In this document: one piece after another, positions 9,196 to 45,475 of the stretch | Layout: each line of letters begins with the position of its first letter | Position numbering within the stretch: position 1 is the first letter of the stretch | IMG/VR virus record: IMGVR_UViG_3300049001_000044 | Location: 62,001-126,000 of that record | Length of the DNA stretch: 64,000 nucleotides | Reading direction: 5' to 3' (one strand) | Position numbers and translations under genes: made by a program | The notes under the pieces: generated by a model | What the model saw: only the letters and a program-made list of their open reading frames with translations | Database searches by the model: none | What the model was told of the DNA's origin: nothing

Positions 9196-9232
9196 AATGG
9201 TATTGTAGCTTGTTGCACTTTGGAAATAAACT

Positions 9233-9307
9233 GAGGTGCTCAGAGACCTCCGTATAGTTTGTAATGATTGTTATTGTGCATTTTGCACTGAGGTCTCTGA
9301 GCACCTC
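9233..9307. repeat. perfect 18-bp inverted repeat GAGGTGCTCAGAGACCTC (dispersed family)
   Basis: Arms 9233-9250 and 9290-9307. Confidence 0.9.
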
Positions 9308-9425
9308 TGGTGACCTCCAGAATACATAGGAAGCACATCAATAGCATTGAGAGTCTTGACAACATTCAATAAGCAAAAAGTTATCAAGAAATAAAATGTA
9401 ATTGTAGCAACGTTACGGAGGTTAA

Positions 9426-9683
9426 ATGAAAAAAGGTTTAGTTACCCCCTTTGATAATCCACCCACTGCGCCTTTCACCAATTTGCAGGCGGTGCGTGAT
9501 TGGCATCAGCAATACGCAGTCAGTTGCGAGCGCAAGGCCGAACGTCATGCAGTAACGGCGCAGACCACAGGTGGCAGTAATAGCGCCTCGCATGCCAACC
9601 ACTTCTCGGAAAGGGCGAAGATGCACCAGTCGGCGGTGAATTTGATCGATGAGATCATCTCGCCCGCCAAGTTGGCCGCATGA
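9426..9683 (+). CDS. hypothetical protein
   Basis: GGAGG RBS, 85 aa. Confidence 0.65.
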   Translation: MKKGLVTPFDNPPTAPFTNLQAVRDWHQQYAVSCERKAERHAVTAQTTGGSNSASHANHFSERAKMHQSAVNLIDEIISPAKLAA

Positions 9684-9748
9684 GGACCCAGCACGGGAAG
9701 TTTGGGCAGCCACTACCACCTGCGTGAATTATTTCCTTGGGAGGTTTA

Positions 9749-9985
9749 ATGACTGATGTTGCAAAACTGAAGCGCGGCTTCGCTGCGATGTCCCCTGAAA
9801 AACAGCGGGAAATTGCAAGTAAAGGCGGCAAGGCCGCGCATGCCATGGGCTTCGCCCATCAATTCACCAGTGAAAACGCTGCAGAAGCAGGAAGGAAAGG
9901 AGGGCTGAAAATCAGTAAGGACCGTGAACACATGTCCAGGATAGGAACCCTAGGGGCGCTGAAGATCGGACGCGGCGGCCACTAG
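9749..9985 (+). CDS. KGG-repeat general stress protein
   Basis: RGFAAMSPEKQREIASKGG...AGRKGG. Confidence 0.85.
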   Translation: MTDVAKLKRGFAAMSPEKQREIASKGGKAAHAMGFAHQFTSENAAEAGRKGGLKISKDREHMSRIGTLGALKIGRGGH

Positions 9986-10029
9986 GGTATTGAAAACCTT
10001 TAGGGGCCGAGGAGGGCCCCTTTTCCGTT

Positions 10030-11259
10030 TTAGAGTTCTATCACGTCCTCAGCTGTGGGGCCGTAGGAGAGGTACTTGACGTTGACTTCAGGGATTCGGT
10101 CAGCGATCACCTTTGACAGTTCATCAGTGAGGATGGTGATGAGCTGCCCTCCCAAGTTCACGTTCAACTTTTCACCAACTTGATCCAGGCAAGTGATCAT
10201 CAGTTGGGGTTTGTTGACATGGATACCAGTGATTTTGCTCAAGCTGTAGGATCGCTGAATATCCCTACTGATCATCAGCGACAAGGTATCCACATCCAAT
10301 GGTGCGTAGCGGAAGTGTCCTTGCCAAGGGCCAGTTACGTTCGTCTTATCTGTGGGGATTTGTGTAGACGTGATAGGGAGATTCTCCATCTTCAGAGGGC
10401 CGGCGCCGTGACGCGTGAGGTAGCACCTAGTGATGTAGACTGGGGTGATCTCGTTGTAGAACGTCTCGTACGCAGTCAAGATGCTTGATGGCAGTCCCGT
10501 GACCGAGCGAGTGACGTGAGGGAAGATTCCCAGCTGTTCATCCAACATCAAACCTTGTGCGCCTTCAATGATGAGGTCAGTGTAGGGGCGGGTGTAGTCA
10601 GCGCGAATGCTCTTCAACGGGGAGAGCATCGTTGCGTCGTGTTCGAAGTCAGGATTTTCGAACATCTGCAGGAACGGCGCAGCCTCTTCCTCGTCGACCC
10701 TGTCCTTCAACAGCTCGTATTCTTTCTTCCAGTACTCATTGAAGATATGTTGCAAGGTGCGGGACATCTGGTAGATGGAGGTCTGCTTCACCATGCCAAG
10801 CGTGATGCTGCGGCCGGCGAGGCTGCGAGTGACCGTCTCGTTGATGCCTAACCCGCAAGAACCGTGGCGCCCTTTACCACGGGACAACTCGCGAAGAGAG
10901 TTCAATGCCATGTCGTAGATGATGGTGACGCGGCATTCGGGGTGAGCAATAATCTTGTCCTCAAGATCCACACCCATCAGATTGAGCTGGTCAATCTCTT
11001 TAGTGAGGGAGTAGGGATTGAGGATGAACTGCCGAGCGAGGTAGGTGTTGGCACCAGCAAAGGTACCTGCACCAATATGACCGAAGACATGGCGTTTACC
11101 ATCCTTCGTTTCGACGGTGTGTCCTGCTTGAGCACCACCGTTTTGGCGTGCTACGAGGGAAGGTTTTCCTGCCTTACGAACGAGATAGTCCGTAGTCAGT
11201 CCCTTACCCTCATCGCCGAAGTTTGCACCAATTACTGCAAAAGCGTGATTCATCGACAT
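10030..11259 (-). CDS. purA: adenylosuccinate synthetase-like protein
   Basis: GANFGDEGKG, GGAQAGHT, EGAQG, YLTRHGAGP motifs. Confidence 0.85.
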   Translation of the reverse strand: MSMNHAFAVIGANFGDEGKGLTTDYLVRKAGKPSLVARQNGGAQAGHTVETKDGKRHVFGHIGAGTFAGANTYLARQFILNPYSLTKEIDQLNLMGVDLEDKIIAHPECRVTIIYDMALNSLRELSRGKGRHGSCGLGINETVTRSLAGRSITLGMVKQTSIYQMSRTLQHIFNEYWKKEYELLKDRVDEEEAAPFLQMFENPDFEHDATMLSPLKSIRADYTRPYTDLIIEGAQGLMLDEQLGIFPHVTRSVTGLPSSILTAYETFYNEITPVYITRCYLTRHGAGPLKMENLPITSTQIPTDKTNVTGPWQGHFRYAPLDVDTLSLMISRDIQRSYSLSKITGIHVNKPQLMITCLDQVGEKLNVNLGGQLITILTDELSKVIADRIPEVNVKYLSYGPTAEDVIEL

Positions 11260-11292
11260 CGTGTTGCCACCTTTCATCGTTTGTTGCTTTTG

Positions 11293-11922
11293 TTAACCCA
11301 AATCAGTTTGCTCTGCGTGGTACTTCTGTGGATTCTTGTCGTCTCGCCATACCTTGACGTGGATAGGATCGTGGAGCTCGACATTGTCTTTGTCATCTTC
11401 TCCTCTCCAATCTTCGTTCTTCAGCGTGATGTTGAAGATTGCCCAGGCAACTTCCCTTCCGCTCTTCTTCCAGCGGCCGCGAAGATCAAGTGCGTCGACT
11501 CCCTTGTCGTCAATCCATGCATCTGCGATCTCACCCATGTGGATGTGATTTTCATCGCAGACTTTCTTCAGGGCTCCATCGCTCAGCCTGATCTCGTCTT
11601 CGAAGGAATCTTCGAAGCGTTGTGCTTTGCTCGCCCGGTCAGCCTTGTCAGTTTCCGCCTTGACCGTTTCAGGGTCGCGCAGCTCCTGTGCCTTCCAACC
11701 TGGCTTGAGATCGTCTTTGCTTGGTTGATGTTCGAAGCGTTGGGAAGTACCGTCAGGGTAGAAGGCGAAATAGACCTTGTGCTTTCCCTTGCCGTTGACG
11801 CCCAGCTTACCCACCAAGTCTCCCTTGATGATCTCGCCATACACCTGGCCACCTACTCGCTCAAGACGAGCAATCAGGTCTTCAATCGTGGTTTTATTTT
11901 CTAGCAGCTCATGGACTTTCAT
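11293..11922 (-). CDS. hypothetical, putative head-packaged protein (MKVHELLE)
   Basis: Leader motif; TAAATA upstream at 11959-11964. Confidence 0.6.
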   Translation of the reverse strand: MKVHELLENKTTIEDLIARLERVGGQVYGEIIKGDLVGKLGVNGKGKHKVYFAFYPDGTSQRFEHQPSKDDLKPGWKAQELRDPETVKAETDKADRASKAQRFEDSFEDEIRLSDGALKKVCDENHIHMGEIADAWIDDKGVDALDLRGRWKKSGREVAWAIFNITLKNEDWRGEDDKDNVELHDPIHVKVWRDDKNPQKYHAEQTDLG

Positions 11923-12048
11923 TTTATGTGATCCTCAAATTGAGTGTAAGTGATCTCATATTTATTTTAACACAATCAAAATCAACATGCACAAAAGGCA
12001 CAGGACTTTTACATCCTGTGCCCCTCTGTCTCCTCTACTTCTAGAGAA

Positions 12049-12441
12049 TTACTTCACGTCGAACTCGACCTCGTGCTTGACACCCTTGGCATCGTAAAAG
12101 AAGAGCTCGATGCCGGAGATAGGTGCGCCATTACCCTCGCAGGTTATGTCACCCTCGTAGAACTCATCGCTGAAACCTTCAGCGATTTGGTTGTCCGGGT
12201 CTTCGATGCCGTTCGCAGCCAGGATTTCTGCTGCCTGATCTTCCAGGTATTCACCATCTTCCAGGCCGTCGATGATCAGCAGATCCTGCTTCAGTCGTTC
12301 TTCCTCATCCATGCCGTAGTGGATGGTCCGCTCAGTATCGCCATCTGCATCGCCATGCATGTAGGTAACATTCAGCTCATACATGTTCTCGTAGGATGGG
12401 AGGGAGACCTGTTTGCCTACTTTCAGTTCAACGTTTTTCAT
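12049..12441 (-). CDS. hypothetical acidic protein
   Basis: ORF followed by terminator hairpin (~11997-12021). Confidence 0.65.
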   Translation of the reverse strand: MKNVELKVGKQVSLPSYENMYELNVTYMHGDADGDTERTIHYGMDEEERLKQDLLIIDGLEDGEYLEDQAAEILAANGIEDPDNQIAEGFSDEFYEGDITCEGNGAPISGIELFFYDAKGVKHEVEFDVK

Positions 12442-12448
12442 TTTTTGA

Positions 12449-13348
12449 TTAGCCTTGGGTCAGTGCGTTCTTGAATGCGTGGCGGAGATCGTCAGGGCAA
12501 TTGCTCGACTCGATCACGTCGTAGATGTCTTCGCCTTGTGCGATCTTCAGGGTCGCGGTGACGACATCAGCCAGCTTCTTGTGGTTGCGCAGGAAGATGA
12601 CATTCGGACCCAACAGCTTGTTCCATGCCGAAGCGACATTGTCAGGGTAGTGGCGGAAGTGGCTGCCTTCTTCCGTGACAATGTGGAAGACCTTGTACTT
12701 CTCTTGCACCACGCTGAGCAGCGATTGGATGCTTTCGACTTCAGGCACGTCATTCGACCCGAATACCCGACGCAGATGCTCTTTGCTCAGTGGAGTCGGC
12801 GGCGGCGGTTCATCGCCGATCGTGAAGAGGAAACCCTTCTGACCGCGACGATCGAAGGAGTCGATCTTGGTTCGGTGGGCAGCGAAGTACCACGGCAGAT
12901 CGTACGACTCGTGATGATTGCCACCGCCACCGCTCTCAAGATACAGAGTGCGCAGCTGTTCGATCAGAGGAATGGCACCGGCTTCGAACTGCGAAACTTG
13001 CAGGGGAGCTTGGTCACTTGCACGAACATCGCCGATGCCCATGAACATGATGTGCGGATCGGTGACAGGCTGGTCTTCGTAGATCGACTCCATCAGCGGC
13101 TGCAGACCTTCACGTGCGATGTTCTCGGCCACGAAGCCCATCGAACCAGTTACGTCCAGGCCGAAGATAACCGGAGTGGAGCTGGGGTTGGCCGCGCTGT
13201 CGCACGATTCACGCAGCATGATCTTGGCCGGGTCCAGGCCAGCAGGCAGGTAGCGGCTTTCGAAGATTTGTTCGCGGCTCTTCGATTCGAGCTTGTGAGT
13301 TGAACGGTAGGAGACGTATTCATTGCTGTCAAAACGGTGGTTACCCAT
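12449..13348 (-). CDS. vWA domain protein
   Basis: MIDAS LDVTGSMG, GGGG..ESY, FTIGDE. Confidence 0.8.
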   Translation of the reverse strand: MGNHRFDSNEYVSYRSTHKLESKSREQIFESRYLPAGLDPAKIMLRESCDSAANPSSTPVIFGLDVTGSMGFVAENIAREGLQPLMESIYEDQPVTDPHIMFMGIGDVRASDQAPLQVSQFEAGAIPLIEQLRTLYLESGGGGNHHESYDLPWYFAAHRTKIDSFDRRGQKGFLFTIGDEPPPPTPLSKEHLRRVFGSNDVPEVESIQSLLSVVQEKYKVFHIVTEEGSHFRHYPDNVASAWNKLLGPNVIFLRNHKKLADVVTATLKIAQGEDIYDVIESSNCPDDLRHAFKNALTQG

Positions 13349-13400
13349 GATCTTTCCTTTCAGAGCGGAGAGAGGAATCCTCTCTCCTTGTTGATGTTGA

Positions 13401-14087
13401 TTAGCCGCGGAACGGAGTCTTGCTGCGACCACCGTAGCTATCGTTGCTATCGCCGCTGAACATCTTCATCATCTGCATTTGCATCATCATCTGCATCATG
13501 TTGGCGCCACCTGCTGCACCTGCTGCCGGGTCCGTACCTGCTGCGCCGGTCTGCATCATCAACATCATTGGCATCATCTTCTCGAGATCGAGATCGTCGC
13601 CGCCCATCATGATCATCGGCAGCAACATGCCTTGCATTGCGCCCAGACCGGTAGCACCACCTGGCAGCATGGTAGTCAGCGAGCGAACAACCATCACGCC
13701 GCTATCGAGGCCGAACATCTGCACTTTCGGCGGGTTCCATGCCTGGATGGTACCGTTAGCACGCATGATTTTGAAGGTGCCTTTCTCGCTCTTCGAGATG
13801 ACCCAGCCAGGAGTATCGCCCGTGGTGTAGATCATATCGCCGACATTCACGGCTTCCTTCGGAGTGGATTGTGCGAAGGCAGGAACCGCGACGGCCATGT
13901 CTTCGAAGAAGTTGATGGTGATCGAAGCGTCTTCGCCTTCACCATCGATCGAAGCGATACCGTCTTTCGTTTGGACGCCGATCTTACCACTCATCAGGTC
14001 CCATACGACGCCATCGACACGGCGGAAGAAGCGGTTCATCAGTGCATCGCCACCAGGCATTTTGAATTTCGACATGTTCATTTTCAT
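13401..14087 (-). CDS. hypothetical protein with Met/Gln-rich low-complexity C-terminus
   Basis: MMQMMMQMQMMKM tail; promoter upstream at 14171-14204. Confidence 0.75.
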   Translation of the reverse strand: MKMNMSKFKMPGGDALMNRFFRRVDGVVWDLMSGKIGVQTKDGIASIDGEGEDASITINFFEDMAVAVPAFAQSTPKEAVNVGDMIYTTGDTPGWVISKSEKGTFKIMRANGTIQAWNPPKVQMFGLDSGVMVVRSLTTMLPGGATGLGAMQGMLLPMIMMGGDDLDLEKMMPMMLMMQTGAAGTDPAAGAAGGANMMQMMMQMQMMKMFSGDSNDSYGGRSKTPFRG

Positions 14088-14216
14088 TTCCTTTTTGCAG
14101 TTGCCCTCTGTCTCGAAACAGCAAGGGCAGATTGGTTTGGTGTACTTCATCTTGTTAGGCTTGCAGTTGAATTGTAGCTTGTTAGCATTCACTTCAAAAC
14201 TGCAAGCCCACTCGCT

Positions 14217-15731
14217 TTAGGCTTCCGTGTTCTGACGCATTTCGTCCAGGGTGATCTCGTTGTAGAGGTCACCGTAGTGGTAGACGATCTGGTGCAGGTC
14301 TTCCAGGGTGTGGTGCAGGTCACCTTGGTCGATACGGACAGTCTTGATCTCGTTAGTCACGGTATCGCGAACCAGAGTCAGCACACCTTCCTTCGACTTC
14401 TTGCCAGCGTCAGTGACGGGGTCCTTCGCGATGCCGACCCATTCACCATCGACCAGGATCGAAGATGCTTTCTGGGCGAACTTGTACTTGTCGCGATTGA
14501 CTTTCTGCAGCAGTGCACCACCAGAACCGAAGATGATGCAGTCAGCCGAGTAGTTCAAGCCGATGACGATGTTGCCCAGCAGGGTACGGATTGCGGAGTG
14601 ATCCACACCATCGCCTTGGATGATGCCGACGTAGCGGATCTTCTTGTGGCCGGTGCTGGTGTAGTCGAAGCCATAAGCATCTTCCTGCATCTTAAGGATT
14701 TTAGGAACGATTTCCATCATGTCGCCGCTGTCCGGGCGGAAGACCACCTTGATGCCTGATGCCTTGATCAGTTCGACGAATGGAGGAGAGCAGAGTCGAG
14801 CTGCGCAGCGGAAGACATCGCGGCCATCGATGACGAGGGAGAGGATCTTGGCACCCAGCTTCTTCGCCGATGCGATCTGGTGCTCGAGGTAGTGGATTTC
14901 GCCGGCATCGTCCAGGCCGAAGGAACATTCCACACTGTGTTCAGTGGCGTAGACGGAGAAAGCAGCCATGTCGCACTTGTAGAAGTGGTTCGCAGCCAGC
15001 ACACCTTCGATGGTATCAGAACCCATGAAGTTGATGAGGTGAGCAAAGCCACCGATTTCAGCCTGCTCCGCGCAGGTAACACCGCGGCCGCCGAAGTCGT
15101 GGTAGGCGAAGCCGATCATCGACATGTCTGCACCCGACAACTTGTAGTAGTGCTTGATTTCCTGCTTAATGTCGTAGTCATCGGTCGCGATGGTGGTGGG
15201 GTACCAGATACCGCGGAGGATGATGGTCTCGAAGTAAGCGGACATCCAGAACAGGTCTTCGTCCAGGCAGGTGACCGTGTACAGAGCGTTGCCGCCCGGA
15301 ACCTTGGTGCCTTCCTTCGCTGCACGAATGATGAGAGGAGCGTAGCCGTTGTACTTCTCCACCACTTTCTCCCAGTCCTTGCGGGAAACCAGGGAGTAGC
15401 CGAAGTGCTTCAGCGAGAACGCTTCAGCTTCGTCGATGTGGAATTTGGTGATGCGCTGGGTAAAGTAGCGCTTCAGCAGCATCTGCATACCGGCAGGAAC
15501 GATGGTCTCGTCCTTGGATACGCGGGCTTCGCCGTAGCTGGACATGCCCTTGATGCCGGGACGGTACGAGAAGGCGTGTGCACCCTTGTACGAGTCCGAA
15601 CGGAGGATGAGGGAGATGATGAGCCGATCCAGGTAGGTGTACTTCTTGTCCGTGCTGGATGGAGTGAGGTACTTGGAAATGAAGTCGAACTTCTGTACCA
15701 AGCCGATTGCGCTGCTTGCAACTTGAGTCAT
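14217..15731 (-). CDS. nadV: nicotinamide phosphoribosyltransferase (NAMPT)
   Basis: DSYK, HDFGGRG, ATEHS, RPDSGD, IQGDG, FGSGGALLQ, KDPVTD..KKSK. Confidence 0.93.
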   Translation of the reverse strand: MTQVASSAIGLVQKFDFISKYLTPSSTDKKYTYLDRLIISLILRSDSYKGAHAFSYRPGIKGMSSYGEARVSKDETIVPAGMQMLLKRYFTQRITKFHIDEAEAFSLKHFGYSLVSRKDWEKVVEKYNGYAPLIIRAAKEGTKVPGGNALYTVTCLDEDLFWMSAYFETIILRGIWYPTTIATDDYDIKQEIKHYYKLSGADMSMIGFAYHDFGGRGVTCAEQAEIGGFAHLINFMGSDTIEGVLAANHFYKCDMAAFSVYATEHSVECSFGLDDAGEIHYLEHQIASAKKLGAKILSLVIDGRDVFRCAARLCSPPFVELIKASGIKVVFRPDSGDMMEIVPKILKMQEDAYGFDYTSTGHKKIRYVGIIQGDGVDHSAIRTLLGNIVIGLNYSADCIIFGSGGALLQKVNRDKYKFAQKASSILVDGEWVGIAKDPVTDAGKKSKEGVLTLVRDTVTNEIKTVRIDQGDLHHTLEDLHQIVYHYGDLYNEITLDEMRQNTEA

Positions 15732-15810
15732 GATAAAGCTCCTTTATCTAAAATTTGGCTTTGCGTCTATCGCTTTGCCGTGGTCATCAAGAGTTGATAT
15801 TGAAATTGTA

Positions 15811-16395: not shown

Positions 16396-16398
16396 GAT

Positions 16399-16971: not shown

Positions 16972-17205
16972 CGTAGTTCCTTCATCGAAAAGCATTCAGA
17001 TGATTCATTGTAATGCTTTTCGATCGCATCAAAAACTGCAGTTACAGGTGCTTTTCACCCACCATGGAAAATTCCTTAGGTGCCCAGAGGCGAGTGAACC
17101 TGGACCGCCTTACAACGACGATCATGCCAGGACTGTCTTGGTGCCACACGAGCAAATCTCGGTAGTCTACAACCCAGTCCCAAAAGTCCTTGAGGGCGGT
17201 CATGG

Positions 17206-18639: not shown

Positions 18640-18983
18640 CTTTTCAGCTGCATTTTACTGGAGACGCTTGATGTCTTGCTTCAGGTCAGCGATTTTCTTC
18701 ATCGTGCCTGGAACGTCGTAGGCCTTGCCTTGGCGCTTCTTCTGCAGGGCTTCCTGCATTTCAGCCTCGAGCTGGTTAATGCGATCCTGCAGCACCTTGA
18801 TTTTCTTGTCGTTCTTTGCCATTCAGTTCTCCCATGTGATGATTAGTTTTCGACAGCAGCTCCTGCAGTCGTTGACCTTGCTCTTTAACTTTGTCAAGTA
18901 GAGTATTCATAAGAGCATTTTACACGAGAGTACACACAACAAAAACTGCAGTAGGTCCTTAGAGCATAGTCTGGGACCTCTAA

Positions 18984-19057
18984 ATGAGGCCCAGAGATGA
19001 CACAGGGACCTCGATGACAGCTTTATCATCAAAGGTCCCTGAGGTCTCTGAGCACCT
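18984..19057. repeat. dispersed intergenic repeat cassette
   Basis: ATGAGGCCCAGAGATG (18984-18999), hairpin, GAGGTCTCTGAGCACCT (19041-19057). Confidence 0.85.
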
Positions 19058-19368
19058 TACAGAGTTTTCGCGATCTGAATCGAGGAGGTTTGTTGCAGGT
19101 ACTGTTGTTGGACGTTCTCCGCAGGAGTGAACTTCACGAGGACGCTATTTGCGGGAATCTCCAAGGTCTCAATCTCTGGATTCGAGAGAGTCCATGGCAC
19201 GAACGCCAGTCCTAGTTGACCTGGGCGAACTTGCTGGAATTGGAGAATGTGGGGACGACGAACGACGTAGGAGGTTGGCTTGTCGCTGCCCAAGAGAGTG
19301 AGAGTGCTCTTCAGTTCGGTGACGAGCTCTTCACCGGTGATCATTTTCAGGGAAACGATTTCAGACAT
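19057..19368 (-). CDS. Sm/LSm-like fold protein conserved in T4-like phages
   Basis: IVSLKMITGEELV..P..L....GLAFVPW pattern; late promoter upstream. Confidence 0.55.
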   Translation of the reverse strand: MSEIVSLKMITGEELVTELKSTLTLLGSDKPTSYVVRRPHILQFQQVRPGQLGLAFVPWTLSNPEIETLEIPANSVLVKFTPAENVQQQYLQQTSSIQIAKTL

Positions 19369-21437: not shown

Positions 21438-21469
21438 CTACAACCTCCGTTGCTGCATTCGATAAGGCT

Positions 21470-21498
21470 ATAATATCACAACCTGATAGAAAGTACAC
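21470..21498 (-). promoter_or_regulatory. early-type promoter GTGTAC-N17-TATTAT
   Basis: Same architecture at 41528-41556 and 47297-47326. Confidence 0.7.
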
Positions 21499-21535
21499 AG
21501 GCAAAATTGTAACAAGCCAGACTTCCTGTTACAAG

Positions 21536-24790: not shown

Positions 24791-24907
24791 GATAATGTTG
24801 GTAGGATTCGAACCTACACTTGCAGTCATTTGATGAACAGTTGGGGTGTTTATTCCCTCTCCCAGTCTTAGTGGGACGCCTTGACCAATTTGGCGTTCAA
24901 CATTATC
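24791..24907 (-). ncRNA. tRNA-Leu(AAG)-like RNA with oversized variable region, no CCA
   Basis: 10-bp closing stem GATAATGTTG/CAACATTATC; D arm; TCCCA-CTAAGAC-TGGGA; GTAGG-TTCGAAT-CCTAC. Confidence 0.65.
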
Positions 24908-25726: not shown

Positions 25727-25807
25727 CTGCTGATAGTGAAATTATAAGCTACTTGACACTGAATAAAAACTGATTATTTCCCCACTGTATCTTTTCGTTC
25801 TCATCAG

Positions 25808-25896
25808 CAGATGAGGCCCAGAGGTGTTGTGCAAAAGTGACAACAGCAAATACAACGAAGGGTCCCTAACACCACTGGGACCCTTCTGACACCTCT
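25808..25896. repeat. dispersed intergenic repeat cassette
   Basis: CAGATGAGGCCCAGAG plus GAAGGGTCCC/GGGACCCTTC hairpin. Confidence 0.75.
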
Positions 25897-25904
25897 AGCG
25901 ATAC

Positions 25905-31223: not shown

Positions 31224-31226
31224 TTC

Positions 31227-32421: not shown

Positions 32422-32553
32422 ATTTTCTCCAGGAAAATGGTTTATCAAAGTATGTATTATTTTACATCGCAGGAGGTGTCCTGTACACTCGATGTATGCA
32501 TTTGCAACAAAGGGCCCAGATCATCTCTGAGCCCCTCTAGGAGGTCCTGAAGG

Positions 32554-36622: not shown

Positions 36623-36629
36623 TCAAACC

Positions 36630-36791: not shown

Positions 36792-36819
36792 CTAACAGCT
36801 CCTAGTTGATTAGGCTATT

Positions 36820-38578: not shown

Positions 38579-38639
38579 GTTAGCTCCTTTCTGTAACAGA
38601 GCTATTGTACTTCTGTATTATTCAGAAGAAATCTTCTAC

Positions 38640-38729
38640 CTGAGGTGCTCAGAGACCTCCAGAGACCTCCTATGCGGTCGATGTATGCAACAACACCCAG
38701 ACAGACCCTTCATCTCTGGGCCTCATCTG
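38640..38729. repeat. dispersed intergenic repeat cassette
   Basis: CTGAGGTGCTCAGAGACCTCC (identical to 9231-9251) and CATCTCTGGGCCTCATCTG (reverse complement of 45457-45475). Confidence 0.9.
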
Positions 38730-38753
38730 GGTGTTCGTAGAGGTATCGGAAAC

Positions 38754-39041
38754 CTAGAAGAAGGCAGCACCGTAGTCGTTAAGACGGATCAGTGCAGTAT
38801 CCTGCTCCCCACGGCTTTCCAATTTCAGGGTATCGGACTTGCCATGGCACTCATCGAGGAACCCGGTCGAGGACAGGAAGCCTGCACTTATGGGAGTCGC
38901 AGTGGAACCTTCCCAATGTTTCTCTAGTGTTGGTTGAACCGCTTCCGCGATGAGGGAGTGCACGCACAGCTCAGGAAAGACGATGGGAACTTCAAGCCCA
39001 CCGCCATCCTTGAAGTCGACCCTGAAGATCACGTACTTCAT
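38754..39041 (-). CDS. hypothetical protein
   Basis: ORF. Confidence 0.65.
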   Translation of the reverse strand: MKYVIFRVDFKDGGGLEVPIVFPELCVHSLIAEAVQPTLEKHWEGSTATPISAGFLSSTGFLDECHGKSDTLKLESRGEQDTALIRLNDYGAAFF

Positions 39042-39493
39042 GCGGTCATTCCGTAAATGAGGGATGCATTCTCACGGATCGCTGCGAAGTTCAGTATTTC
39101 CAGGATCGCGGTGAGATGCTTCCGGTCGGCCACACGTTCAGGGTAGGCCTTCATGATGAACTCGTACGCGCTGCTCGGGCCAGTGCAGGAGTTCTGGCAT
39201 TCGCCGGCCACGATGTGGATGATGTCGGCGATTGTGAGCGGGGTGTTCCAGCTTTCGATCAGCTTCAGGAGCTTGTCCTTGTCCTCGGGGAAGAAGTAGC
39301 CGATGTCAGGTTCGTGGGCTTCCATGTCGTCTTCCATGTCGCTAACCGCCTGGCATTCCTGGGCAGTGGCAGCATAGAGTTGAATGCCCTTCTTGCCCAG
39401 CGCTTCGATCATGGCCGTGACGTCTTCCTCCTCGAGGCGAATCACTGCATTGCGGCGGGTATCAGTGGGATGAACCAAAGTAAATTGCCTCAT
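39038..39493 (-). CDS. hypothetical protein
   Basis: Start re-called at MRQFTL. Confidence 0.6.
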   Translation of the reverse strand: MRQFTLVHPTDTRRNAVIRLEEEDVTAMIEALGKKGIQLYAATAQECQAVSDMEDDMEAHEPDIGYFFPEDKDKLLKLIESWNTPLTIADIIHIVAGECQNSCTGPSSAYEFIMKAYPERVADRKHLTAILEILNFAAIRENASLIYGMTA

Positions 39494-39762
39494 GGCATGT
39501 CCTTTGCGAGGGTTACACGGAAGTGGCCAGGATTGACCAGGTAGCTCATCTTGAACGTCCCATTCTTGTTGCCCAGGGGCTTGCGAATGTGGCGATACGA
39601 GTACTTCGCGATTGCCGCACGAACGGCCTGAAACTCGGCGGAGTCCTTGTAGGGGATATCCACGAAGGAACCCGCTGTCTTTTTCGCGGCCAGCTCCTTG
39701 AGGTGGTTCTCGACCATGGTCTCGAGCTCTGACTTGGTCTCCATCAATTCTTGAACTTTCAA
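39490..39762 (-). CDS. hypothetical, putative head-packaged protein (MKVQELME)
   Basis: TTG start after AAGGAG. Confidence 0.6.
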   Translation of the reverse strand: MKVQELMETKSELETMVENHLKELAAKKTAGSFVDIPYKDSAEFQAVRAAIAKYSYRHIRKPLGNKNGTFKMSYLVNPGHFRVTLAKDMP

Positions 39763-39773
39763 TGTCGCGCTCC

Positions 39774-40052
39774 TTACGGCAGTTTGGAGAAGTCCAACCC
39801 TGCTTCGTCGAGGGTGTGGTTCTTGAAGTCGCGGATGTAGTTCGAGAAGTCCATCTCGTAGCGGAAGGACACCTCGTCGCCCACACTCAGCAGGCGTAGC
39901 TTCGCGAGCTCTACCTTGCTCTGTCCCAGCGTTTGACCTTCGTACACAGTCTTCTGCCCTTCGACAACCATCGTCAGGGTAATCATGCCGCCGCGTTCTT
40001 CCATCATGCGTACGCGCTGCACCTTACCACGATTCACCAAATGTGCCATCAT
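39774..40052 (-). CDS. hypothetical protein
   Basis: GAGGAG RBS. Confidence 0.6.
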   Translation of the reverse strand: MMAHLVNRGKVQRVRMMEERGGMITLTMVVEGQKTVYEGQTLGQSKVELAKLRLLSVGDEVSFRYEMDFSNYIRDFKNHTLDEAGLDFSKLP

Positions 40053-40096
40053 CGTTCTCCTCAAAAAGTGGGAGGGTTGGTTCCCTCCCGTTCATC

Positions 40097-41491
40097 TTAT
40101 ACAGCGATCATGTTGCGGCCCTTGAACTCCAGGACTGCGTCATCAGCCATTTCCACGACCTTGTCGAAGCGGATACCGCCACTTGCATCCTTGCGGTTGA
40201 GGGTGGGGAAGCGGAGGGATGCGTGCTTCTTCGCCTTCGTCTTCGACACTTCCTGGAACTTGATCACGGCCGTGGCACCCAGGTATTTCTTGGGGTTAGC
40301 CAGCATGTCTGCCCGCATGTCATCGTTCAGACCCGAGCCGACACAGGTTTCGAAGTAGATGCCATCGTCAGTCCAGCCCGCCACCACGATGCCGCCGACG
40401 GTATTCGCGAGGCGGGATTTGGGGCGACCGTAGTAGAAGCCAATGATGCGAGCGTCCGCCGGGTAGAAGCGCTTGACCTTGATCCAGGTGAAGGTGCGAT
40501 CCCACTCATAAGTGCTGTTCAGGTTCTTCAGGATCAGGCCCTCGATCTTCCTCGCCTTGTTCTCCGGCATGTCGATGGCTTCGTCGCAGTACTCCAGCAT
40601 GTCCGCCTCGTCTTGAACGATGCGTCCTTCCGTGAGGATGATCTTCTTCAGGCCCAGGGCTGGCAGGAGTTCAGCCAGGTACGCACGATTCTGTTCCATC
40701 GTGATGCCGCATTTCTGTGCCATCCAGTCCGTGAGCGGCATGAGGAAGAATGCGCGGAGCCGGAGGGATGCCTTGGCCTCGGTGTTGCCCGCTTTCTTCG
40801 CGTTCACTGTGGCCTCAAAGCCCAGGTCAGAGATGCGTTCGCAGTCCAACACGTAGTCGAATCCCAAGTGGTTGCGAATCTTGTAGAGCTCTTCGTCGAA
40901 GAGGCCGAGGATGTGGGAGGATTGTTTGCCCGACCGGGAGAAGGGGAGGATTTCGTCCTTCTTGACCATGATGATCGTGCGCTCGCCGTCGTACTTGAAG
41001 TCGGCTTGGCAGGGGAAGGTGATGTAGTCCCCGAATTCCATGTCCTCACCCATCTTCTCGGCCAGCATGACCTCGAAGGAAGGGATCACCCCGTACTTGT
41101 CCTTCAGCACCTTGTTCACAGTGTCGGCGGAGAAGCCCGCTTTCAGGTCCTTGTCCAGGATTCGTGCGAGGTAGCGTTGGGTTTCGTGGTCGAAGTAGGA
41201 GAGGGAGTCTGACACCGCCTCTCGTGCGTCATTGCCCGTGAGCTCCTTTGCATCCAGCTTGTCGAGGAGCTGGAAGAACCGGTCGTAATCCTTCTGGGAT
41301 GCGGGGACCTTCGCATCGTCTCCCGGCATATCGAATTTGCGAACGCCGAAAACGCGGAAGGGATTCTGAGCTTCCCAGATCAGCCGCCAGGTATTCTTGT
41401 CGGCTTGTTGCAGGGCAGCCACAATGGCTTTCTTAGTCCCAGCACCGCCAGCAGATTCCGCGGCTTTGATGACTTGTACGAAGTTACTCAT
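40097..41491 (-). CDS. ATP-dependent DNA ligase (T4 gp30-like)
   Basis: KYDGER, EGLILK, WIKVK, VGSG, SLRFP. Confidence 0.92.
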   Translation of the reverse strand: MSNFVQVIKAAESAGGAGTKKAIVAALQQADKNTWRLIWEAQNPFRVFGVRKFDMPGDDAKVPASQKDYDRFFQLLDKLDAKELTGNDAREAVSDSLSYFDHETQRYLARILDKDLKAGFSADTVNKVLKDKYGVIPSFEVMLAEKMGEDMEFGDYITFPCQADFKYDGERTIIMVKKDEILPFSRSGKQSSHILGLFDEELYKIRNHLGFDYVLDCERISDLGFEATVNAKKAGNTEAKASLRLRAFFLMPLTDWMAQKCGITMEQNRAYLAELLPALGLKKIILTEGRIVQDEADMLEYCDEAIDMPENKARKIEGLILKNLNSTYEWDRTFTWIKVKRFYPADARIIGFYYGRPKSRLANTVGGIVVAGWTDDGIYFETCVGSGLNDDMRADMLANPKKYLGATAVIKFQEVSKTKAKKHASLRFPTLNRKDASGGIRFDKVVEMADDAVLEFKGRNMIAV

Positions 41492-41612
41492 TCTTGGTTA
41501 ACCTCAGTTTGTTGTTTTGATAATGTTATTATACCAAGGTTCCTGCAAAAGTACACAACTTTTTTCACTCGTGCCACATAAATATCTGGACGAACCCTAG
41601 ATCTAGGAACCC

Positions 41613-42260
41613 ATGACCATGATCAATCTCGAAAACTTTAAACCTATAAAGCCTTGGCCGACTACAGGCTTCATGCACAACGACAAAATGTTCAGTGATG
41701 AAGATTTTGCGAAGCTCAAGAACTTCAATTTTCGTAAGTGCCAACTCACTGCGGCTGAAGGCAATCGTAAGAGCAAACAGTACTGGAGAACCCAGGACAT
41801 TGACCCAAATGATCCAGCAGAAGTTCTGATCAAACAGACTCTAGAGCAGCTTGATGATTGGGAAGTTCTCAAAGCACTTACCCTCAAAGCATTAGCAAAT
41901 GAAGGACTAACTCCGTCAGATGTGTGGACTGGTGATATCGATGATCTGAAGGATCACTACCTCGGCGTGTTCTGTGCCGTTCATGAAGATGACGCAGAAT
42001 ACTATTTGACGACCCACCTAGATTCAAGACCACTTCTTCAAGTGTACATTGAACCAGATGGGGCGCCAGTTGGAACATACTTCTATGAGATGGATGATTA
42101 CTCGAAGTTTGTGCAGTTGCCATTCAAAGAAAACACTGGATATTTCCAGCTTCATGTTAGACGTGGCTGGCACAGCGTGAGGAACATTCCTGGCGTAACG
42201 AGGCGTTCGATAATTTTCGGGTGGAACATGATGTTCAGTGACAGATTTAGAATGAAATAA
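41613..42260 (+). CDS. 2OG-Fe(II) oxygenase-like protein
   Basis: HLD...GT.F...WHSV...RRS; late promoter CATAAATA at 41577-41584. Confidence 0.7.
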   Translation: MTMINLENFKPIKPWPTTGFMHNDKMFSDEDFAKLKNFNFRKCQLTAAEGNRKSKQYWRTQDIDPNDPAEVLIKQTLEQLDDWEVLKALTLKALANEGLTPSDVWTGDIDDLKDHYLGVFCAVHEDDAEYYLTTHLDSRPLLQVYIEPDGAPVGTYFYEMDDYSKFVQLPFKENTGYFQLHVRRGWHSVRNIPGVTRRSIIFGWNMMFSDRFRMK

Positions 42261-42269
42261 AAAGGGAGC

Positions 42270-42860
42270 CTAGGCTCCCTTTACTTGATCGATTGCCCAC
42301 TTTCGTTCTGTGCAGTGGAAGCAAACTCCGCATGGTGGAATGCTATCATGCTTGGGACATGAACGAGTTAAATCGAGCAAATCATTTACACCAAGCAATG
42401 AGTACAGATAGATCGTCGCGCGCTTATCGAATGTCACGAACGGTGTTGCGTACCCTCTGTACTTGTTATCCATTGCAGTCAATGGACGCATTGGCTTAGG
42501 TCCAGTGTAATCCCAGTTGATTGGATTTTGAGTCACGCCAGTGTAGAGCCAATCGACTTGCTCCATGGTTTCGTAGATGTCTCTACGAAGCAATCCATTC
42601 TCAAGAACGAACTCATGCACCCTAGATCGCAAATCCACGTTGAATTTGTTTTCAAGATAGATGAGTGTGTTATCAATCGAGGCATTCTTCAAGTCTTTTC
42701 GGTACACGACAAAAATTTTGTCAGGCACGACCCCATTTACAAGTAGGCAGTACAGAAGAATTACACTGTCTGCCCCGCCCGAATACGAGATGCCGGTCAT
42801 CCCATCATGCAGCGGGATGATCACGTTTCGATAGGGGGTCTTGTAAATGATTTCCTTCAT
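42270..42860 (-). CDS. QueC-like PP-loop ATPase
   Basis: SYSGGADS; TRSC..CGVCFHCTERKWA. Confidence 0.75.
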   Translation of the reverse strand: MKEIIYKTPYRNVIIPLHDGMTGISYSGGADSVILLYCLLVNGVVPDKIFVVYRKDLKNASIDNTLIYLENKFNVDLRSRVHEFVLENGLLRRDIYETMEQVDWLYTGVTQNPINWDYTGPKPMRPLTAMDNKYRGYATPFVTFDKRATIYLYSLLGVNDLLDLTRSCPKHDSIPPCGVCFHCTERKWAIDQVKGA

Positions 42861-44434
42861 TACGACTTGATACCTTTACCTTGGACTGATTCTTGATCAA
42901 CCTCTTCTAGGAAGGTGAACGAGCTTGATGCGCTCAACTCATCTAGCATTGGTTTGATATCAGACGATACAGCATCTGGTGTCACCAAGAAGAAATAAAT
43001 CTTGGGTGAGACGAATGTAATGCCTGGACAGTGTAGAGTCACGGTGAACCACATCTGCTTAACATTCTCGCCTGGGGCTAGTTGTGTCCCTGGAGTGATT
43101 CGGATACCAACCACGCCGTCATCAGACACTACCGAGTTTTGCAAGATAGTAGCCATCTCAGCATCACCAAATTGCAGCGAGAAGACCAGGTCTTCTTTTT
43201 CAATCTGGGATAGCACGTTAACTGGCATCAGCATTTTCACGTCGACCTTCATATCAGCAGTGCCGCCGAGGGTGTTCGTACCCAGATACTGGATGTTGTT
43301 ATCTGGAAGCGAGTTAGTGTCTGGGCGATGCAGAAGACGATTTTCTGTTTGACTCACCTTATCATTCAAAATCAGCGCATTGTAGGTCGAATCGGCGATC
43401 ATGACGTCCTTCACCTCTTGCGCCATTGGGGCGATCTTGTTGATGCCGAACAGTGCCGATGCAACGCCACTTGCCAACGCGGCCGAGAAAGAAGAACCGG
43501 TGTTAAGCGTGTACTCATCTACCGCATTGAAGCCCGCAACGTCAACGTCTTTAGCTGGCGCATACAGATCAATTTTCTTGTTCACACCATAAACCTCAGC
43601 GAATTCATGATCGTCACTAGTGCTACCTGCAACGGTGAAAACACCCGCCAGACCAGCAGGAGTAACCTCGTCGATGTTTGTGAGAGTGTTACCAGCAGCC
43701 GCAACAACCATCATGCCTGCATCGATGAGTTTGGTAATTTTCGCGTTGATGTACTCGCTCGCTGGGATACGCCACGACATATTCACGACCATTGGCACAT
43801 CGAGTTTCGTCTGACGGTATTCGTAGACTTGGTCGATCAAATCACCCAGTTCACTGATGGATGGTTTGCGAGTAGCATCGCTGACCTTTACGATCTTGAG
43901 TGTTGCGTTCTTGTTGACACCGAGCGTTTTACCAGCTACGAGAGATGCAATTGCAGTGCCGTGACCCAACGTATCTTCGGTGTCAGTGAAATCGGGGAGG
44001 GTGAAGAGGTCTTCGATTTGCACGCCCTCGAACTCGACGTGGTCCTTTCTGATTCCGCTATCCATCACAATAACTTCTACCGATCGCTGCGCTTCAACAG
44101 TCGCAAGATATGGGTTGGCGACAAATGGGGCGTAGCGATTTGCGATTCGATTCTGCGCCCACCCCAGCATTTTGATTGGTGCTTCAGCAGGTTCTAGGAT
44201 TTCGCCTGCTTGAATACGACTGACGGGATCGGCAACTATTTCAGTGGTCCAGCCATCGTCGGTCTTTACATGAAACAGAATAGGCTCGCCAACAGCCACG
44301 CAGGACACAAGTCCTTCGGCTTTCAGAGCCATGTTAATCAAGCCGATCGGAATGTTTGACAGATCGGTCTCGTCAGTCTTGAGCAAGAACAGGTTAGCTT
44401 GCTCAGTAGTTGCGAAGGTTAGTTGAAGTTTCAT
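42860..44434 (-). CDS. S8 subtilisin-like serine protease
   Basis: DSGI, HGT, AAAGN, GSSFSA catalytic triad motifs. Confidence 0.9.
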   Translation of the reverse strand: MKLQLTFATTEQANLFLLKTDETDLSNIPIGLINMALKAEGLVSCVAVGEPILFHVKTDDGWTTEIVADPVSRIQAGEILEPAEAPIKMLGWAQNRIANRYAPFVANPYLATVEAQRSVEVIVMDSGIRKDHVEFEGVQIEDLFTLPDFTDTEDTLGHGTAIASLVAGKTLGVNKNATLKIVKVSDATRKPSISELGDLIDQVYEYRQTKLDVPMVVNMSWRIPASEYINAKITKLIDAGMMVVAAAGNTLTNIDEVTPAGLAGVFTVAGSTSDDHEFAEVYGVNKKIDLYAPAKDVDVAGFNAVDEYTLNTGSSFSAALASGVASALFGINKIAPMAQEVKDVMIADSTYNALILNDKVSQTENRLLHRPDTNSLPDNNIQYLGTNTLGGTADMKVDVKMLMPVNVLSQIEKEDLVFSLQFGDAEMATILQNSVVSDDGVVGIRITPGTQLAPGENVKQMWFTVTLHCPGITFVSPKIYFFLVTPDAVSSDIKPMLDELSASSSFTFLEEVDQESVQGKGIKS

Positions 44435-44462
44435 ACGTTCATCCTTGAGGTTGTCTTCTCTA

Positions 44463-45413
44463 TTACTTATTGAGTAGGGAGAATTGGTTGTTGAGTTTTG
44501 TCAGTCTTCTTTCAACTGACGGTGACAGGCGCAATTCACTGCCATACTCGGGGTATTTTCCATGATTTGGATGTCGATACAGCTTCTCGAACATCCAAGC
44601 ATCGTGCGTCTGACTCTCAATCTGCTTCTTAACTAATTCGAAGCCGTTGAACTTTTGCTCCTGTGGGATTACGTCCAAGCCGTTGAGCCACATTCCTTTA
44701 AGCTTGCACCCATACCAGTCGATCTTCTCCTTGTTGATCGTCCGCATGTTAGGTTGCTGAAGCATGAAAGGGATTGCAATGTCCCTGCTGTAGGACAGGA
44801 AGTTTCCAAATATAGGAAACTTGTTCAACTTTGCGAACGTCATCCACGCAGATTGTGATCGTGTTGAAATGAACTCCCACTTTTCGTCTCGAAGACAGGG
44901 TGGGTTGCCACCACAGATGATCGAGGTGGCGTTGTTTTCCATGATGAGCATCTCGTAGAAGTAGAAATGCGTTGCGAACTGCGGTGATGGACATTCATAT
45001 CGCTCCACGAATTCCATTCTATCCCTTGACAGGAACCGCATGATGTCGACCTCATGCACGATGAAGGGTACCGCATTTAGCGCGCAAAAGTTCAACGCAC
45101 TCGTGACATCATGTTGGTTCAAATCGTCCTTGAACCTGAGGATGGCGGCGGTGAAAGGAACACCATTCCGTTTCAAAGCCAAACATGCTGCTTGGCTATC
45201 CACCCCGCCACTCAGTGCCACGAGCGGATTGTCTCCTAATTGGTTACCCAACCGTTTCACTGCATTGTCGAACCTCACACGCATTTCGTCGCAGGTGAAG
45301 CTCGCCACGTTGATGAAAGTGGTCGTGCTTTTCGATAGGCGCCACACGATTGTTCTATCCTCAAGGGTAGGATAGATCCAATCTTTTTCGAAGGGTTCGT
45401 AAGTGTGGTCCAT
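44463..45413 (-). CDS. PP-loop (asparagine synthetase/adenine-nucleotide alpha-hydrolase-like) protein
   Basis: VALSGGVDSQ. Confidence 0.65.
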   Translation of the reverse strand: MDHTYEPFEKDWIYPTLEDRTIVWRLSKSTTTFINVASFTCDEMRVRFDNAVKRLGNQLGDNPLVALSGGVDSQAACLALKRNGVPFTAAILRFKDDLNQHDVTSALNFCALNAVPFIVHEVDIMRFLSRDRMEFVERYECPSPQFATHFYFYEMLIMENNATSIICGGNPPCLRDEKWEFISTRSQSAWMTFAKLNKFPIFGNFLSYSRDIAIPFMLQQPNMRTINKEKIDWYGCKLKGMWLNGLDVIPQEQKFNGFELVKKQIESQTHDAWMFEKLYRHPNHGKYPEYGSELRLSPSVERRLTKLNNQFSLLNK

Positions 45414-45456
45414 GGACGTATTTATCCATGAACCATCAAGGCACCTCCTGGTGCCT

Positions 45457-45475
45457 CAGATGAGGCCCAGAGATG
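45457..45475. repeat. dispersed repeat CAGATGAGGCCCAGAGATG
   Basis: Matches 18984, 25808 and 38711 copies. Confidence 0.85.

What the first reader, a model, noticed from the sequence alone, without database searches (positions are those of the whole stretch)
9231..45475. Dispersed intergenic repeat family sitting beside promoters
Seen: motif A, GAGGTGCTCAGAGACCTC (9233; inverted 9290; inverted 19041; 38642), and motif B, CAGATGAGGCCCAGAGATG (18984, 25808, inverted 38711, 45457). Degenerate copies occur at ~17078 and 32471-32550, the latter sharing TCGATGTATGCA with 38678. Each cassette is ~70-110 nt, contains inverted arms and lies immediately upstream of a promoter. A and B share a GAGG..C(T/C)CAGAGA core. 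Inference: binding sites for one phage protein (nucleoid, replication or packaging), or recombination handles for module shuffling like the PeSL cassettes of T4-type phages.
Basis: partly seen in the sequence, partly recalled or inferred. Interest (0 to 1): 0.65.

Follow-up and report, generated by a model that had tools for sequence, protein, structure and literature searches.

The report
Fixed-geometry palindromic repeats in jumbo phage
The two motifs are the arms of one 100-bp palindromic repeat, present about 28 times in a 343-kb T4-like soil phage, kept at the same sites in a sister phage with the arm spacing fixed at 54 bp, and most likely a protein docking site on DNA.

Summary
Motifs A and B occur exactly where stated, far above chance. 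They are variants of the two inverted arms of a single ~100-bp element.

The window lies in a 343-kb circularly assembled T4-like jumbo phage from soil, which carries about 28 copies, 26 of them intergenic.

- **Arms:** each arm is two or three 10-bp units beginning CAGAG.
- **Spacing:** the inner CAGAG and CTCTG lie 54 nt apart (±1) in nearly all copies and in all orthologs. The 38-49 nt between them differs freely in sequence.
- **Conservation:** eight of eight comparable sites in a diverged sister phage (GC 39-47%) keep the element. One of these lies inside a coding gene.
- **Pairing:** the arms pair no better within a copy than between copies. Neither strand folds better than the other. 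Some copies barely pair.

The phage encodes no detectable transposase, recombinase, HU/IHF or RNase III. No bacterial genome carries the family. Gene-content differences do not cluster at the elements.

My best reading, at moderate confidence, is a dispersed DNA site for a phage-encoded sequence-specific oligomeric protein. It would act as a boundary or architectural site at the ends of transcription units. The closest known architecture is the bacterial REPIN/BIME.

Rivals are an RNA hairpin, a REPIN-like selfish element, and PeSL-type recombination handles, which is the least supported. The function remains unproven.

The parts
9220..9320 (.). Copy W1, nearly symmetric. Arms at 9233-9250 and 9290-9307 form a perfect 18-bp inverted repeat. 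CAGAG is at 9241 and CTCTG at 9295, spacing 54. It lies in a divergent region between a + strand ORF (9426-9683) and the minus-strand genes.
18971..19071 (-). Copy W2. The B-type arm is at 18981-18999 and the A-type arm at 19041-19058, spacing 54. The spacer is itself a 14-17 bp hairpin. The stop codon of gene 19057-19368(-) lies inside the 5' arm.
   Evidence: The sister ortholog L128:2191-2291 keeps the 3' arm 18/18 identical and shows three compensatory changes in the spacer stem.
25798..25898 (-). Copy W3, degenerate. The B-type arm is at 25808-25826. Its partner is CACTG at 25873 followed by GGACCCTTCTGACACCTCTAG, spacing 54.
   Evidence: 28/58, below the threshold used for counting
32450..32550 (.). 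Copy W4, degenerate. It shares TCGATGTATGCA with W5. A relative with GC 34% (L033:15255-15355) has an element at roughly the same place.
   Evidence: 32/58
38639..38739 (+). Copy W5. The A arm at 38642-38659 has an extra tandem CAGAGACCTC unit (38650 and 38660). The inverted B arm is at 38711-38729. Spacing is 54 from the inner unit. The arms do not pair in the minimum-energy fold.
45438..45539 (-). Copy W6, a solo arm. The B arm is at 45457-45475. The partner position falls in the 3' end of ORF 45485-45892(-) and is almost erased (CATCTCG).
   Evidence: 25/58
59821..59921 (.). Copy W7, inside ORF 59694-60311(-), spacing 54. It is retained in the sister phage.
   Evidence: Nucleotide identity is 89% in the element against 76% in the rest of the gene. 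Third codon positions are 76% against 58% (p=0.08).
17064..17162 (.). It lies in a small ORF conserved as protein in the sister phage, spacing 52. Not counted as a copy.

Best explanation
The element is a cis-acting DNA site. Each arm carries two or three CAGAG-led decamers phased every 10 bp. The two arms are inverted and held exactly 54 bp apart, about five helical turns, across a spacer whose sequence is free but AT-richer than the genome. A weak central palindrome, cGATGT-N8-10-ACATCg, sits at the dyad.

I infer that an unidentified, phage-encoded, sequence-specific protein binds both arms as an oligomer. That would bend or loop the spacer and build a defined nucleoprotein complex at about 28 roughly evenly spread places. 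These are mostly just past the 3' ends of genes or transcription units.

The most likely consequence is a boundary or architectural role. Candidates are a conditional roadblock or insulator between transcription units, or an anchoring site for a topoisomerase or packaging protein.

- **Shown:** the family, its geometry, its conservation at orthologous sites, and the absence of pairing covariation.
- **Inferred:** that a protein binds, that the phage encodes it, and what the complex does.
For: 1. **Spacing.** In an unforced half-site pairing, 12 of 22 convergent pairs lie at exactly 54 nt and no other distance occurs more than twice. Divergent and same-strand controls show no peak. In the sister-phage copies the spacing is 54; in L033/L043 it is 53. 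Spacer sequence identity between orthologs is only 41%, against 63-74% in the arms.
2. **Phasing.** CAGAG units recur every 10 nt, as in CTGGGACTTAC|CAGAGGTGCT|CAGAGACCTC. W5 has one extra tandem unit.
3. **No covariation.** 75.9% of arm cells pair, but shuffling 3' arms among copies gives 75.7% (255 of 500 shuffles as high). The covariation score is 0.209 against 0.192.
4. **Conserved non-pairing bases.** Inner-arm positions are conserved but not complementary: C.A in 12 of 21 copies and C.C in 14 of 21.
5. **Weak pairing in some copies.** Arm-arm duplex energy ranges from -7.6 to -39.5 kcal/mol. W5 does not fold arm to arm. Neither strand folds better: 9 of 22, p=0.24.
6. **One-sided outer unit.** The outer decamer is often present on one side only.
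7. **Retention.** 8 of 8 comparable loci are occupied in a sister phage with GC 39-47% and 60-90% protein identity, including an intragenic copy with raised nucleotide identity. One copy also sits in a phage with GC 34%.
8. **Even spread.** Copies are spread more evenly than random intergenic placement: CV 0.66 against 0.96, P=0.013.
9. **No other source.** No bacterial genome carries the family. The nearest cultured relative, Ralstonia phage RsoM2USA, lacks it. That fits a lineage-specific protein-site pair.
Against: - No binding protein is identified. Neighbouring genes are ORFans or metabolic.
- No HU/IHF-type bender is encoded.
- The distance to downstream promoter-like hexamers varies, so it is not a classical operator.
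- About a quarter of the spacers form strong hairpins coaxial with the arms (z -3.7 to -7.4). One ortholog pair shows three compensatory changes in such a stem. That points to nucleic-acid pairing in at least some copies.
- About 11 copies abut the upstream stop codon, as 3'-UTR hairpins do.
- Column 21/82 does covary: T-A, T-G and C-G, with no mismatch in 21 copies.
- No experimental or RNA data exist for this uncultivated phage.
Confidence: 0.4

Rival explanations
1. REPIN- or MITE-like non-autonomous element. Two inverted ends, recognised as a hairpin by a transposase, spread through intergenic space in this lineage. The copies are now quiescent and are kept alike by gene conversion in a highly recombinogenic T4-type phage.
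For: [quoted passage not shown]
- The family is lineage-restricted: many copies here and in the sister phage, one in an intermediate relative, and none in 13 more distant relatives or in RsoM2USA. That implies an expansion.
- One copy lies inside a gene.
- Arm variants (GTGCT versus AGGCC; inner ACCTC versus RTGNN) swap between orthologous copies, as conversion would produce.
- One spacer stem shows compensatory changes.
Against: - The phage shows no Y1/RAYT transposase, no rve DDE transposase and no tyrosine or serine recombinase in six-frame Pfam searches.
- Motif A is not repeated in any of about 185,000 bacterial species genomes: 22 scattered single hits, at chance level.
- There are 8 of 8 orthologous occupancies and no empty site.
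- Most spacers (15 of 22) have no hairpin capacity.
- The arms show no within-copy compensation.
- The intragenic copy is more conserved than its gene.
Confidence: 0.22
2. RNA-level hairpin in minus-strand transcripts. It would be an RNase III-type processing site or a 3'-end stabiliser or attenuator between cistrons, analogous to the T7 RNase III sites or to transcribed REP elements.
For: - Many copies fold into long hairpins far more stable than shuffles (z -4.7 to -8.7).
- About 11 copies start within 0-12 nt of the upstream stop codon. Four lie inside operons with no promoter before the next gene.
- Column 21/82 varies as U-A, U-G and C-G without mismatch.
- One spacer stem shows compensatory changes between orthologs, with G.U pairs on the minus strand.
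Against: - There is no strand asymmetry in folding energy.
- There is no covariation beyond the arm consensus.
- A strictly fixed loop length and a conserved arm sequence are not needed for a hairpin.
- Some copies do not pair arm to arm.
- About 8 copies lie after an intrinsic-terminator-like hairpin and before a promoter-like site, where little transcription is expected.
- Copy 252963 has its ACCTCC-bearing arm on the opposite side relative to its + strand genes, unlike most other copies. Orientation bias overall is only 11:4.
- There is no Rfam match and the phage encodes no RNase III.
Confidence: 0.2
3. PeSL-like recombination handles: short dispersed homologies that mediate deletion, insertion and exchange of gene cassettes.
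For: - 25-30 bp near-identical arms are dispersed in a T4-type phage with very active homologous recombination. This rests on established knowledge of T4.
- Arm variants swap between orthologs.
- In the GC-34% relative, the single copy sits where synteny with this phage breaks.
- About 0.9 kb of extra DNA lies next to the ortholog of copy 57002 in L004.
Against: - The conserved part lacks the promoter and short terminator stem that define PeSLs (PMC4122927).
- In the about 55 kb of this genome covered by sister-phage contigs, 1 of 5 element-bearing intergenic regions adjoins a non-conserved gene, against 22 of 68 without an element (Fisher p=1.0).
- All 8 comparable sites are retained.
- The fixed 54-bp geometry is not explained by a homology-only role.
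Confidence: 0.1

Closest known systems
REPINs / BIMEs (REP doublets) of bacterial chromosomes (PMC3116915, PMC3337134)
   Same: Both have two inverted, highly conserved ends separated by a less conserved spacer of fixed length. Both run to tens of copies, are extragenic, often lie just after genes, and have hairpin potential.
   Different: This family is in a phage genome. No RAYT or Y1 transposase is present. The arms are built of phased 10-bp CAGAG units. Most spacers do not form hairpins and the arms show no compensatory covariation. All comparable copies are fixed at orthologous sites.
PeSL / PmSL promoter-terminator cassettes of T4-type phages (PMC2839356, PMC4122927)
   Same: Both are dispersed intergenic repeats in T4-related phages, lying among terminators and sigma-70-like promoters.
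   Different: PeSLs are defined by a promoter plus a short GC stem-loop. Here the conserved unit is a 100-bp palindrome with neither. Promoter-like hexamers lie outside it at variable distance. No association with indels was seen.
Stoperators of Cluster A mycobacteriophages (PMC9283540, PMC6550527)
   Same: Both give dozens of copies of one protein-binding sequence scattered through a phage genome, mainly in short intergenic gaps. This is a working model for dispersed sites of one phage protein that act on elongating polymerase.
   Different: Stoperators are about 13-14 bp, asymmetric, bound by a monomeric immunity repressor, and belong to temperate phages. This element is 100 bp and two-fold symmetric, in an apparently lytic T4-like phage, and no repressor was found.
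T7-type RNase III processing sites
   Same: Both are families of similar intergenic hairpins within polycistronic phage transcripts.
   Different: T7 sites are about 50-60 nt hairpins with small loops and a defined strand. Here the 'loop' is a fixed 38-49 nt, neither strand is favoured, and pairing is poor in some copies.

Membership tests
PeSL (T4-type promoter-early stem-loop) | Sigma-70-like -35/N17/-10 promoter inside the repeated cassette | tested here: not met
   The consensus of 21 aligned copies has no promoter hexamers. The consensus scan finds none inside the elements. -10-like hexamers lie 5-62 nt outside.
PeSL (T4-type promoter-early stem-loop) | Short GC-rich stem-loop terminator adjoining the promoter | tested here: not met
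   The arms are 18-30 nt and separated by 38-49 nt. Terminator-like hairpins, where present, are separate and lie on either side.
PeSL (T4-type promoter-early stem-loop) | Preferential location at indel or replacement breakpoints between close relatives | tested here: not met
   1 of 5 regions with an element against 22 of 68 without, Fisher p=1.0. The sample is small.
REPIN / REP doublet | Two inverted conserved ends at a fixed distance, extragenic, many copies | tested here: met
   Spacing is 54 ±1. 26 of about 28 copies are intergenic.
REPIN / REP doublet | Spacer and ends form one hairpin, with frequent compensatory changes | tested here: inconclusive
   7 of 22 spacers fold better than shuffles and 15 do not. 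The arms show no within-copy covariation. One ortholog pair has 3 compensatory changes.
REPIN / REP doublet | Cognate RAYT (Y1 HUH transposase) in the same genome | tested here: not met
   PF01797 gives no match in the phage while the controls respond. The host is unknown. No bacterial genome repeats motif A.
REPIN / MITE | Evidence of movement: empty sites, target duplications, excision junctions | tested here: not met
   8 of 8 orthologous sites are occupied. Only assembled contigs of the source run were available and they show no variant. Raw reads were not available.
Integron attC | R''/R' core sites (RYYYAAC / GTTRRRY) and an IntI tyrosine recombinase | tested here: not met
   The core sites are absent from the consensus. 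PF00589 gives no match.
Stoperator-type dispersed operator | One short site bound by an identified phage repressor, dispersed and oriented with transcription | tested here: inconclusive
   Dispersal is met. Orientation bias is only 11:4. No repressor was identified. Binding is not testable here.
RNase III processing hairpin | dsRNA stem maintained by selection on the transcribed strand | tested here: not met
   There is no strand asymmetry and no covariation beyond the consensus. Some copies do not pair. Cleavage itself is not testable here.
Any Rfam RNA family | Match at gathering score | tested here: not met
   Only tRNA matches in the window.

The most novel reading that the evidence does not exclude
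The elements are a virus-borne counterpart of REPINs. They would be a population of palindromic doublets that multiplied inside a jumbo-phage lineage using an unrecognised phage-encoded protein that binds hairpins or arms. They would since have been domesticated as evenly spaced genome-organising sites, for example for the phage type II topoisomerase or the packaging machinery. This would be the first such replicator-turned-architecture system described in a virus.
Probability: 0.15. Interest if true: 0.8.

Novelty: new variant of a known kind. Interest (0 to 1): 0.55.

Why it matters
Jumbo phages carry hundreds of genes, yet almost nothing is known about how their long genomes are partitioned for transcription, topology or packaging.

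This repeat has a strictly fixed geometry and is conserved at orthologous sites across a large shift in base composition. It is spread more evenly than chance. That makes it a concrete, synthesisable handle for finding the protein that reads it.

If the protein-site reading is right, it would define a new genome-wide cis/trans system in T4-related jumbo phages. If the mobile reading is right, it would extend REPIN-type elements to viruses.

It also warns annotators that motif families such as 'A' and 'B' may be halves of one larger unit.

Tried and rejected
- **Known RNA family.** Rfam gives only tRNAs.
- **Variable spacers as guides or antisense.** Spacers have only chance-level 13-19 nt matches elsewhere in the genome.
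- **Host-derived REP.** No bacterial genome repeats the arm.
- **phiKZ-type phage with its own RNA polymerase.** PF00562 gives no match. The replication and structural genes are T4-like.
- **Near relatives among cultured phages.** There are none by megablast. The closest is Ralstonia phage RsoM2USA, at 47% DNA-polymerase identity, and it lacks the element.
- **Loose gapped patterns in IMG/VR.** These returned only chance hits, apart from contigs already known.
- **Analogous palindromes with other sequences in 13 more distant relatives.** No recurrent arms were found.
- **Strong orientation bias.** On a clear marker (inner ACCTCC) it is only 11:4, which is not significant.
- **Strict 'terminator, element, promoter' order.** The order varies. 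The sigma-70 consensus scan is not enriched.
- **Expression or variant evidence from reads.** Only the source soil run holds the phage, as contigs. There are no RNA runs and no joints beyond repeat cross-matches.
- **A regulator gene next to a copy.** Neighbours are ORFans, DHFR, nudix or phosphohydrolase genes.


Full report
**Context.** The window is bases 62001-126000 of a single 343,229-bp contig with GC 50.5%. Its ends overlap by 127 bp, so the assembly is circular. It is an IMG/VR virus record from a soil metagenome. About 89% of my ad-hoc gene calls lie on the minus strand.

Hallmark genes are T4-like:
- a family-B DNA polymerase, the topoisomerase II large subunit, and an SbcC/gp46-like nuclease;
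- baseplate wedge and tail sheath proteins;
- NAD-salvage, ligase and nucleotide-metabolism genes.

No near relative exists among cultured phages. The closest is Ralstonia phage RsoM2USA, at 47% DNA-polymerase identity.

**The observation.** Reading the flanks and mapping the whole genome shows that A and B are variants of the two inverted arms of one element of about 100 bp.

On the minus strand the consensus reads ..accaGAGGtGCTCAGAGACCTCC, then about 38 variable nt, then CAtCTCTGgGCctCTCTgGTaag.tC.ag. Each arm is a run of 10-nt units that start with CAGAG, as in CTGGGACTTAC|CAGAGGTGCT|CAGAGACCTC. W5 carries one extra tandem unit.

A template with fixed geometry finds 22 copies at or above 34 of 58 positions, against a shuffled-genome maximum of 31. 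Degenerate or off-by-one copies bring the total to about 28, of which 26 are intergenic. The window holds seven: 9220, 18971, 25798, 32450, 38639, 45438 (a solo arm) and 59821 (intragenic).

**Geometry.** This is the most telling feature. In an unforced pairing of half-sites, 12 of 22 convergent pairs are exactly 54 nt apart, and no other distance occurs more than twice. Divergent and same-strand arrangements show no such peak. Copies 57002 and 5139 have 53 and 55.

The sequence between the arms differs freely from copy to copy. It is AT-richer than the genome (42% against 50.5% GC). It shows only a weak central palindrome, cGATGT-N8-10-ACATCg, at the dyad.

**Relatives.** Exact and degenerate arm searches recovered contigs of a sister phage: L002/L005, L003, L004, L006 and L007, and later L105 and L128. 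They have GC 39-47%, 60-90% protein identity, and are syntenic.

- All eight loci that can be compared carry the element at the same place, in every case with spacing 54.
- Between orthologs the arms are 63-74% identical and the spacers 41%.
- At W2 the 3' arm is 18/18 identical while the adjoining promoter region has diverged.
- The intragenic copy W7 is kept inside an ORF whose protein is 79% identical. Nucleotide identity is 89% in the element against 76% outside. Third codon positions are 76% against 58% (p=0.08).
- A phage with GC 34% (L033/L043) has one copy at roughly the position of W4.
- Thirteen other relatives with 50-60% ligase identity have none near the ligase gene, and RsoM2USA has none.
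- No bacterial genome repeats the arm.

The family is therefore specific to this phage lineage and long-lived at fixed sites.

**Is it a hairpin?** Many copies fold very stably on either strand. The tests for selection on pairing are negative.

- 75.9% of arm cells pair, but dealing the 3' arms out among copies gives 75.7% (255 of 500 shuffles as high). Complementarity therefore follows from each arm matching a consensus.
- Only one column pair covaries: T-A, T-G and C-G.
- Inner-arm positions are conserved yet non-complementary: C.A in 12 copies and C.C in 14 of 21.
- Arm-arm duplex energy runs from -7.6 to -39.5 kcal/mol, and neither strand is favoured (9 of 22, p=0.24).
- W5 does not fold arm to arm.
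- The outer decamer is frequently present on one side only.

Some evidence points the other way. Seven of 22 spacers form hairpins coaxial with the arms, four of them very strong. The W2 spacer stem shows three compensatory double changes between orthologs. So pairing, or arm-to-arm conversion of a quasi-palindrome, matters in a minority of copies.

**Position.** On the gene strand, about 11 copies begin within 0-12 nt of the upstream stop codon. About 8 follow a terminator-like hairpin, and many are followed by a -10-like or ATAAATA late-type motif at a variable distance. Four lie directly between a stop codon and the next ribosome-binding site.

Orientation, judged by the inner ACCTCC marker, is 11:4 with the genes, which is not significant. 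One ortholog has the marker on the opposite arm. Copies are spread more evenly than random intergenic placement: CV 0.66 against 0.96, P=0.013.

**Mobility and recombination.** Six-frame Pfam searches find no Y1/RAYT, rve, tyrosine or serine recombinase in the phage. They also find no HU/IHF and no RNase III, while the controls respond. Gene-content differences with the sister phage are not enriched beside elements: 1 of 5 against 22 of 68. Only the source run holds the phage, as contigs, with no RNA and no variant joints.

**Interpretation.** The following together fit a DNA site read by a sequence-specific oligomeric protein better than a structure-only hairpin or a homology-only recombination handle:
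- fixed spacing of about five helical turns over a free spacer;
- 10-bp phasing of the arm units;
- conserved but non-pairing bases;
- absence of covariation;
- retention across a large GC shift and inside a gene;
- even spread along the genome.

Placement at the ends of genes suggests a boundary, roadblock or architectural role. I hold this at about 0.4.

The published REPIN description is the closest architecture: inverted conserved ends, fixed distance, and a spacer constrained in length (PMC3116915). It supports a selfish-origin rival at about 0.2, weakened by the missing transposase and the fixed sites. An RNA-hairpin role is also at about 0.2, and PeSL-like shuffling at about 0.1. These readings are not mutually exclusive, since a once-mobile element may have been domesticated.

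**Comparison and novelty.** The element is not a PeSL by definition, because the repeat contains no promoter and no short terminator (PMC4122927). It is not an attC site, not a stoperator and not any Rfam family. It resembles REPIN/BIME doublets in form and stoperators in the idea of one protein with many dispersed sites. My two literature searches for comparable phage repeats returned only the PeSL papers and nothing resembling this element. I rate it a new variant of a known kind, with function unproven.

Noticed in passing
window 21461-21534 and 47288-47340; also genome 5033, 9107, 12511, 42670, 45292: A second repeat family has 7 copies, all on the minus strand. It reads (TTGTAACAGG-N8-CC)TGTTACAAT, then about 45 nt, then ..GTGTACA..CCATGGTAATATAGCCTTATCGA. 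The -35-like and -10-like hexamers are the two halves of a palindrome in at least two copies. It looks like a strong early-promoter or operator cassette with a conserved leader.
   Followed up: partly
window 1087, 15837, 17039, 18949, 25593, 35507, 36849 (5' ends, minus strand): GCAGTTTTT occurs 11 times on the minus strand of the genome and never on the plus strand, mostly in intergenic DNA just upstream of -10-like hexamers. It is conserved in the sister phage next to two elements. It may be part of a promoter class.
   Followed up: partly
window 24793-24904 and 901-1027 (minus strand): Rfam tRNA matches of 112 and 127 nt that ARAGORN did not call. They may be intron-containing or otherwise unusual tRNA genes near the phage tRNA cluster.
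   Followed up: no
L019:400-520 (genome 286,400-286,520): About 110 nt of non-coding DNA is almost identical in the sister phage. It includes a 12-bp hairpin (GCAGCAGGACCTC-CCAG-AGGTCCTGCTGC) whose stem shows compensatory changes. It is a candidate structured RNA adjoining an element arm.
   Followed up: partly
window 9195 and 18912 (minus-strand ATG): A -10-like hexamer (TACAAT, TAAAAT) lies exactly 6 nt upstream of an ATG with no Shine-Dalgarno sequence. These small ORFs may be translated from leaderless mRNAs.
   Followed up: no
window 8009-9064 (-): This protein combines an N-terminal HNH-endonuclease-like stretch with an RNA ligase family match (phrog_24030). It lies next to the most perfect palindromic copy, W1.
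   Followed up: no
window 10030-11277 (-): An adenylosuccinate-synthetase-like gene matches the PHROG named for the PurZ-type enzyme of 2-aminoadenine phages. Whether this phage modifies its adenines was not examined.
   Followed up: no
genome 1656-1889, 4462-4638, 57158-57379: A small paralogous gene family is dispersed in the genome, and several members lie within 1 kb of an element. The sister contig L004 has about 0.9 kb of extra DNA between the element and its copy.
   Followed up: partly
genome 154.6-186.5 kb and 253-276 kb: The longest element-free stretches coincide with the large structural-gene blocks (sheath, baseplate, head). Elements are denser in the regions rich in small ORFs and metabolic genes.
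   Followed up: no
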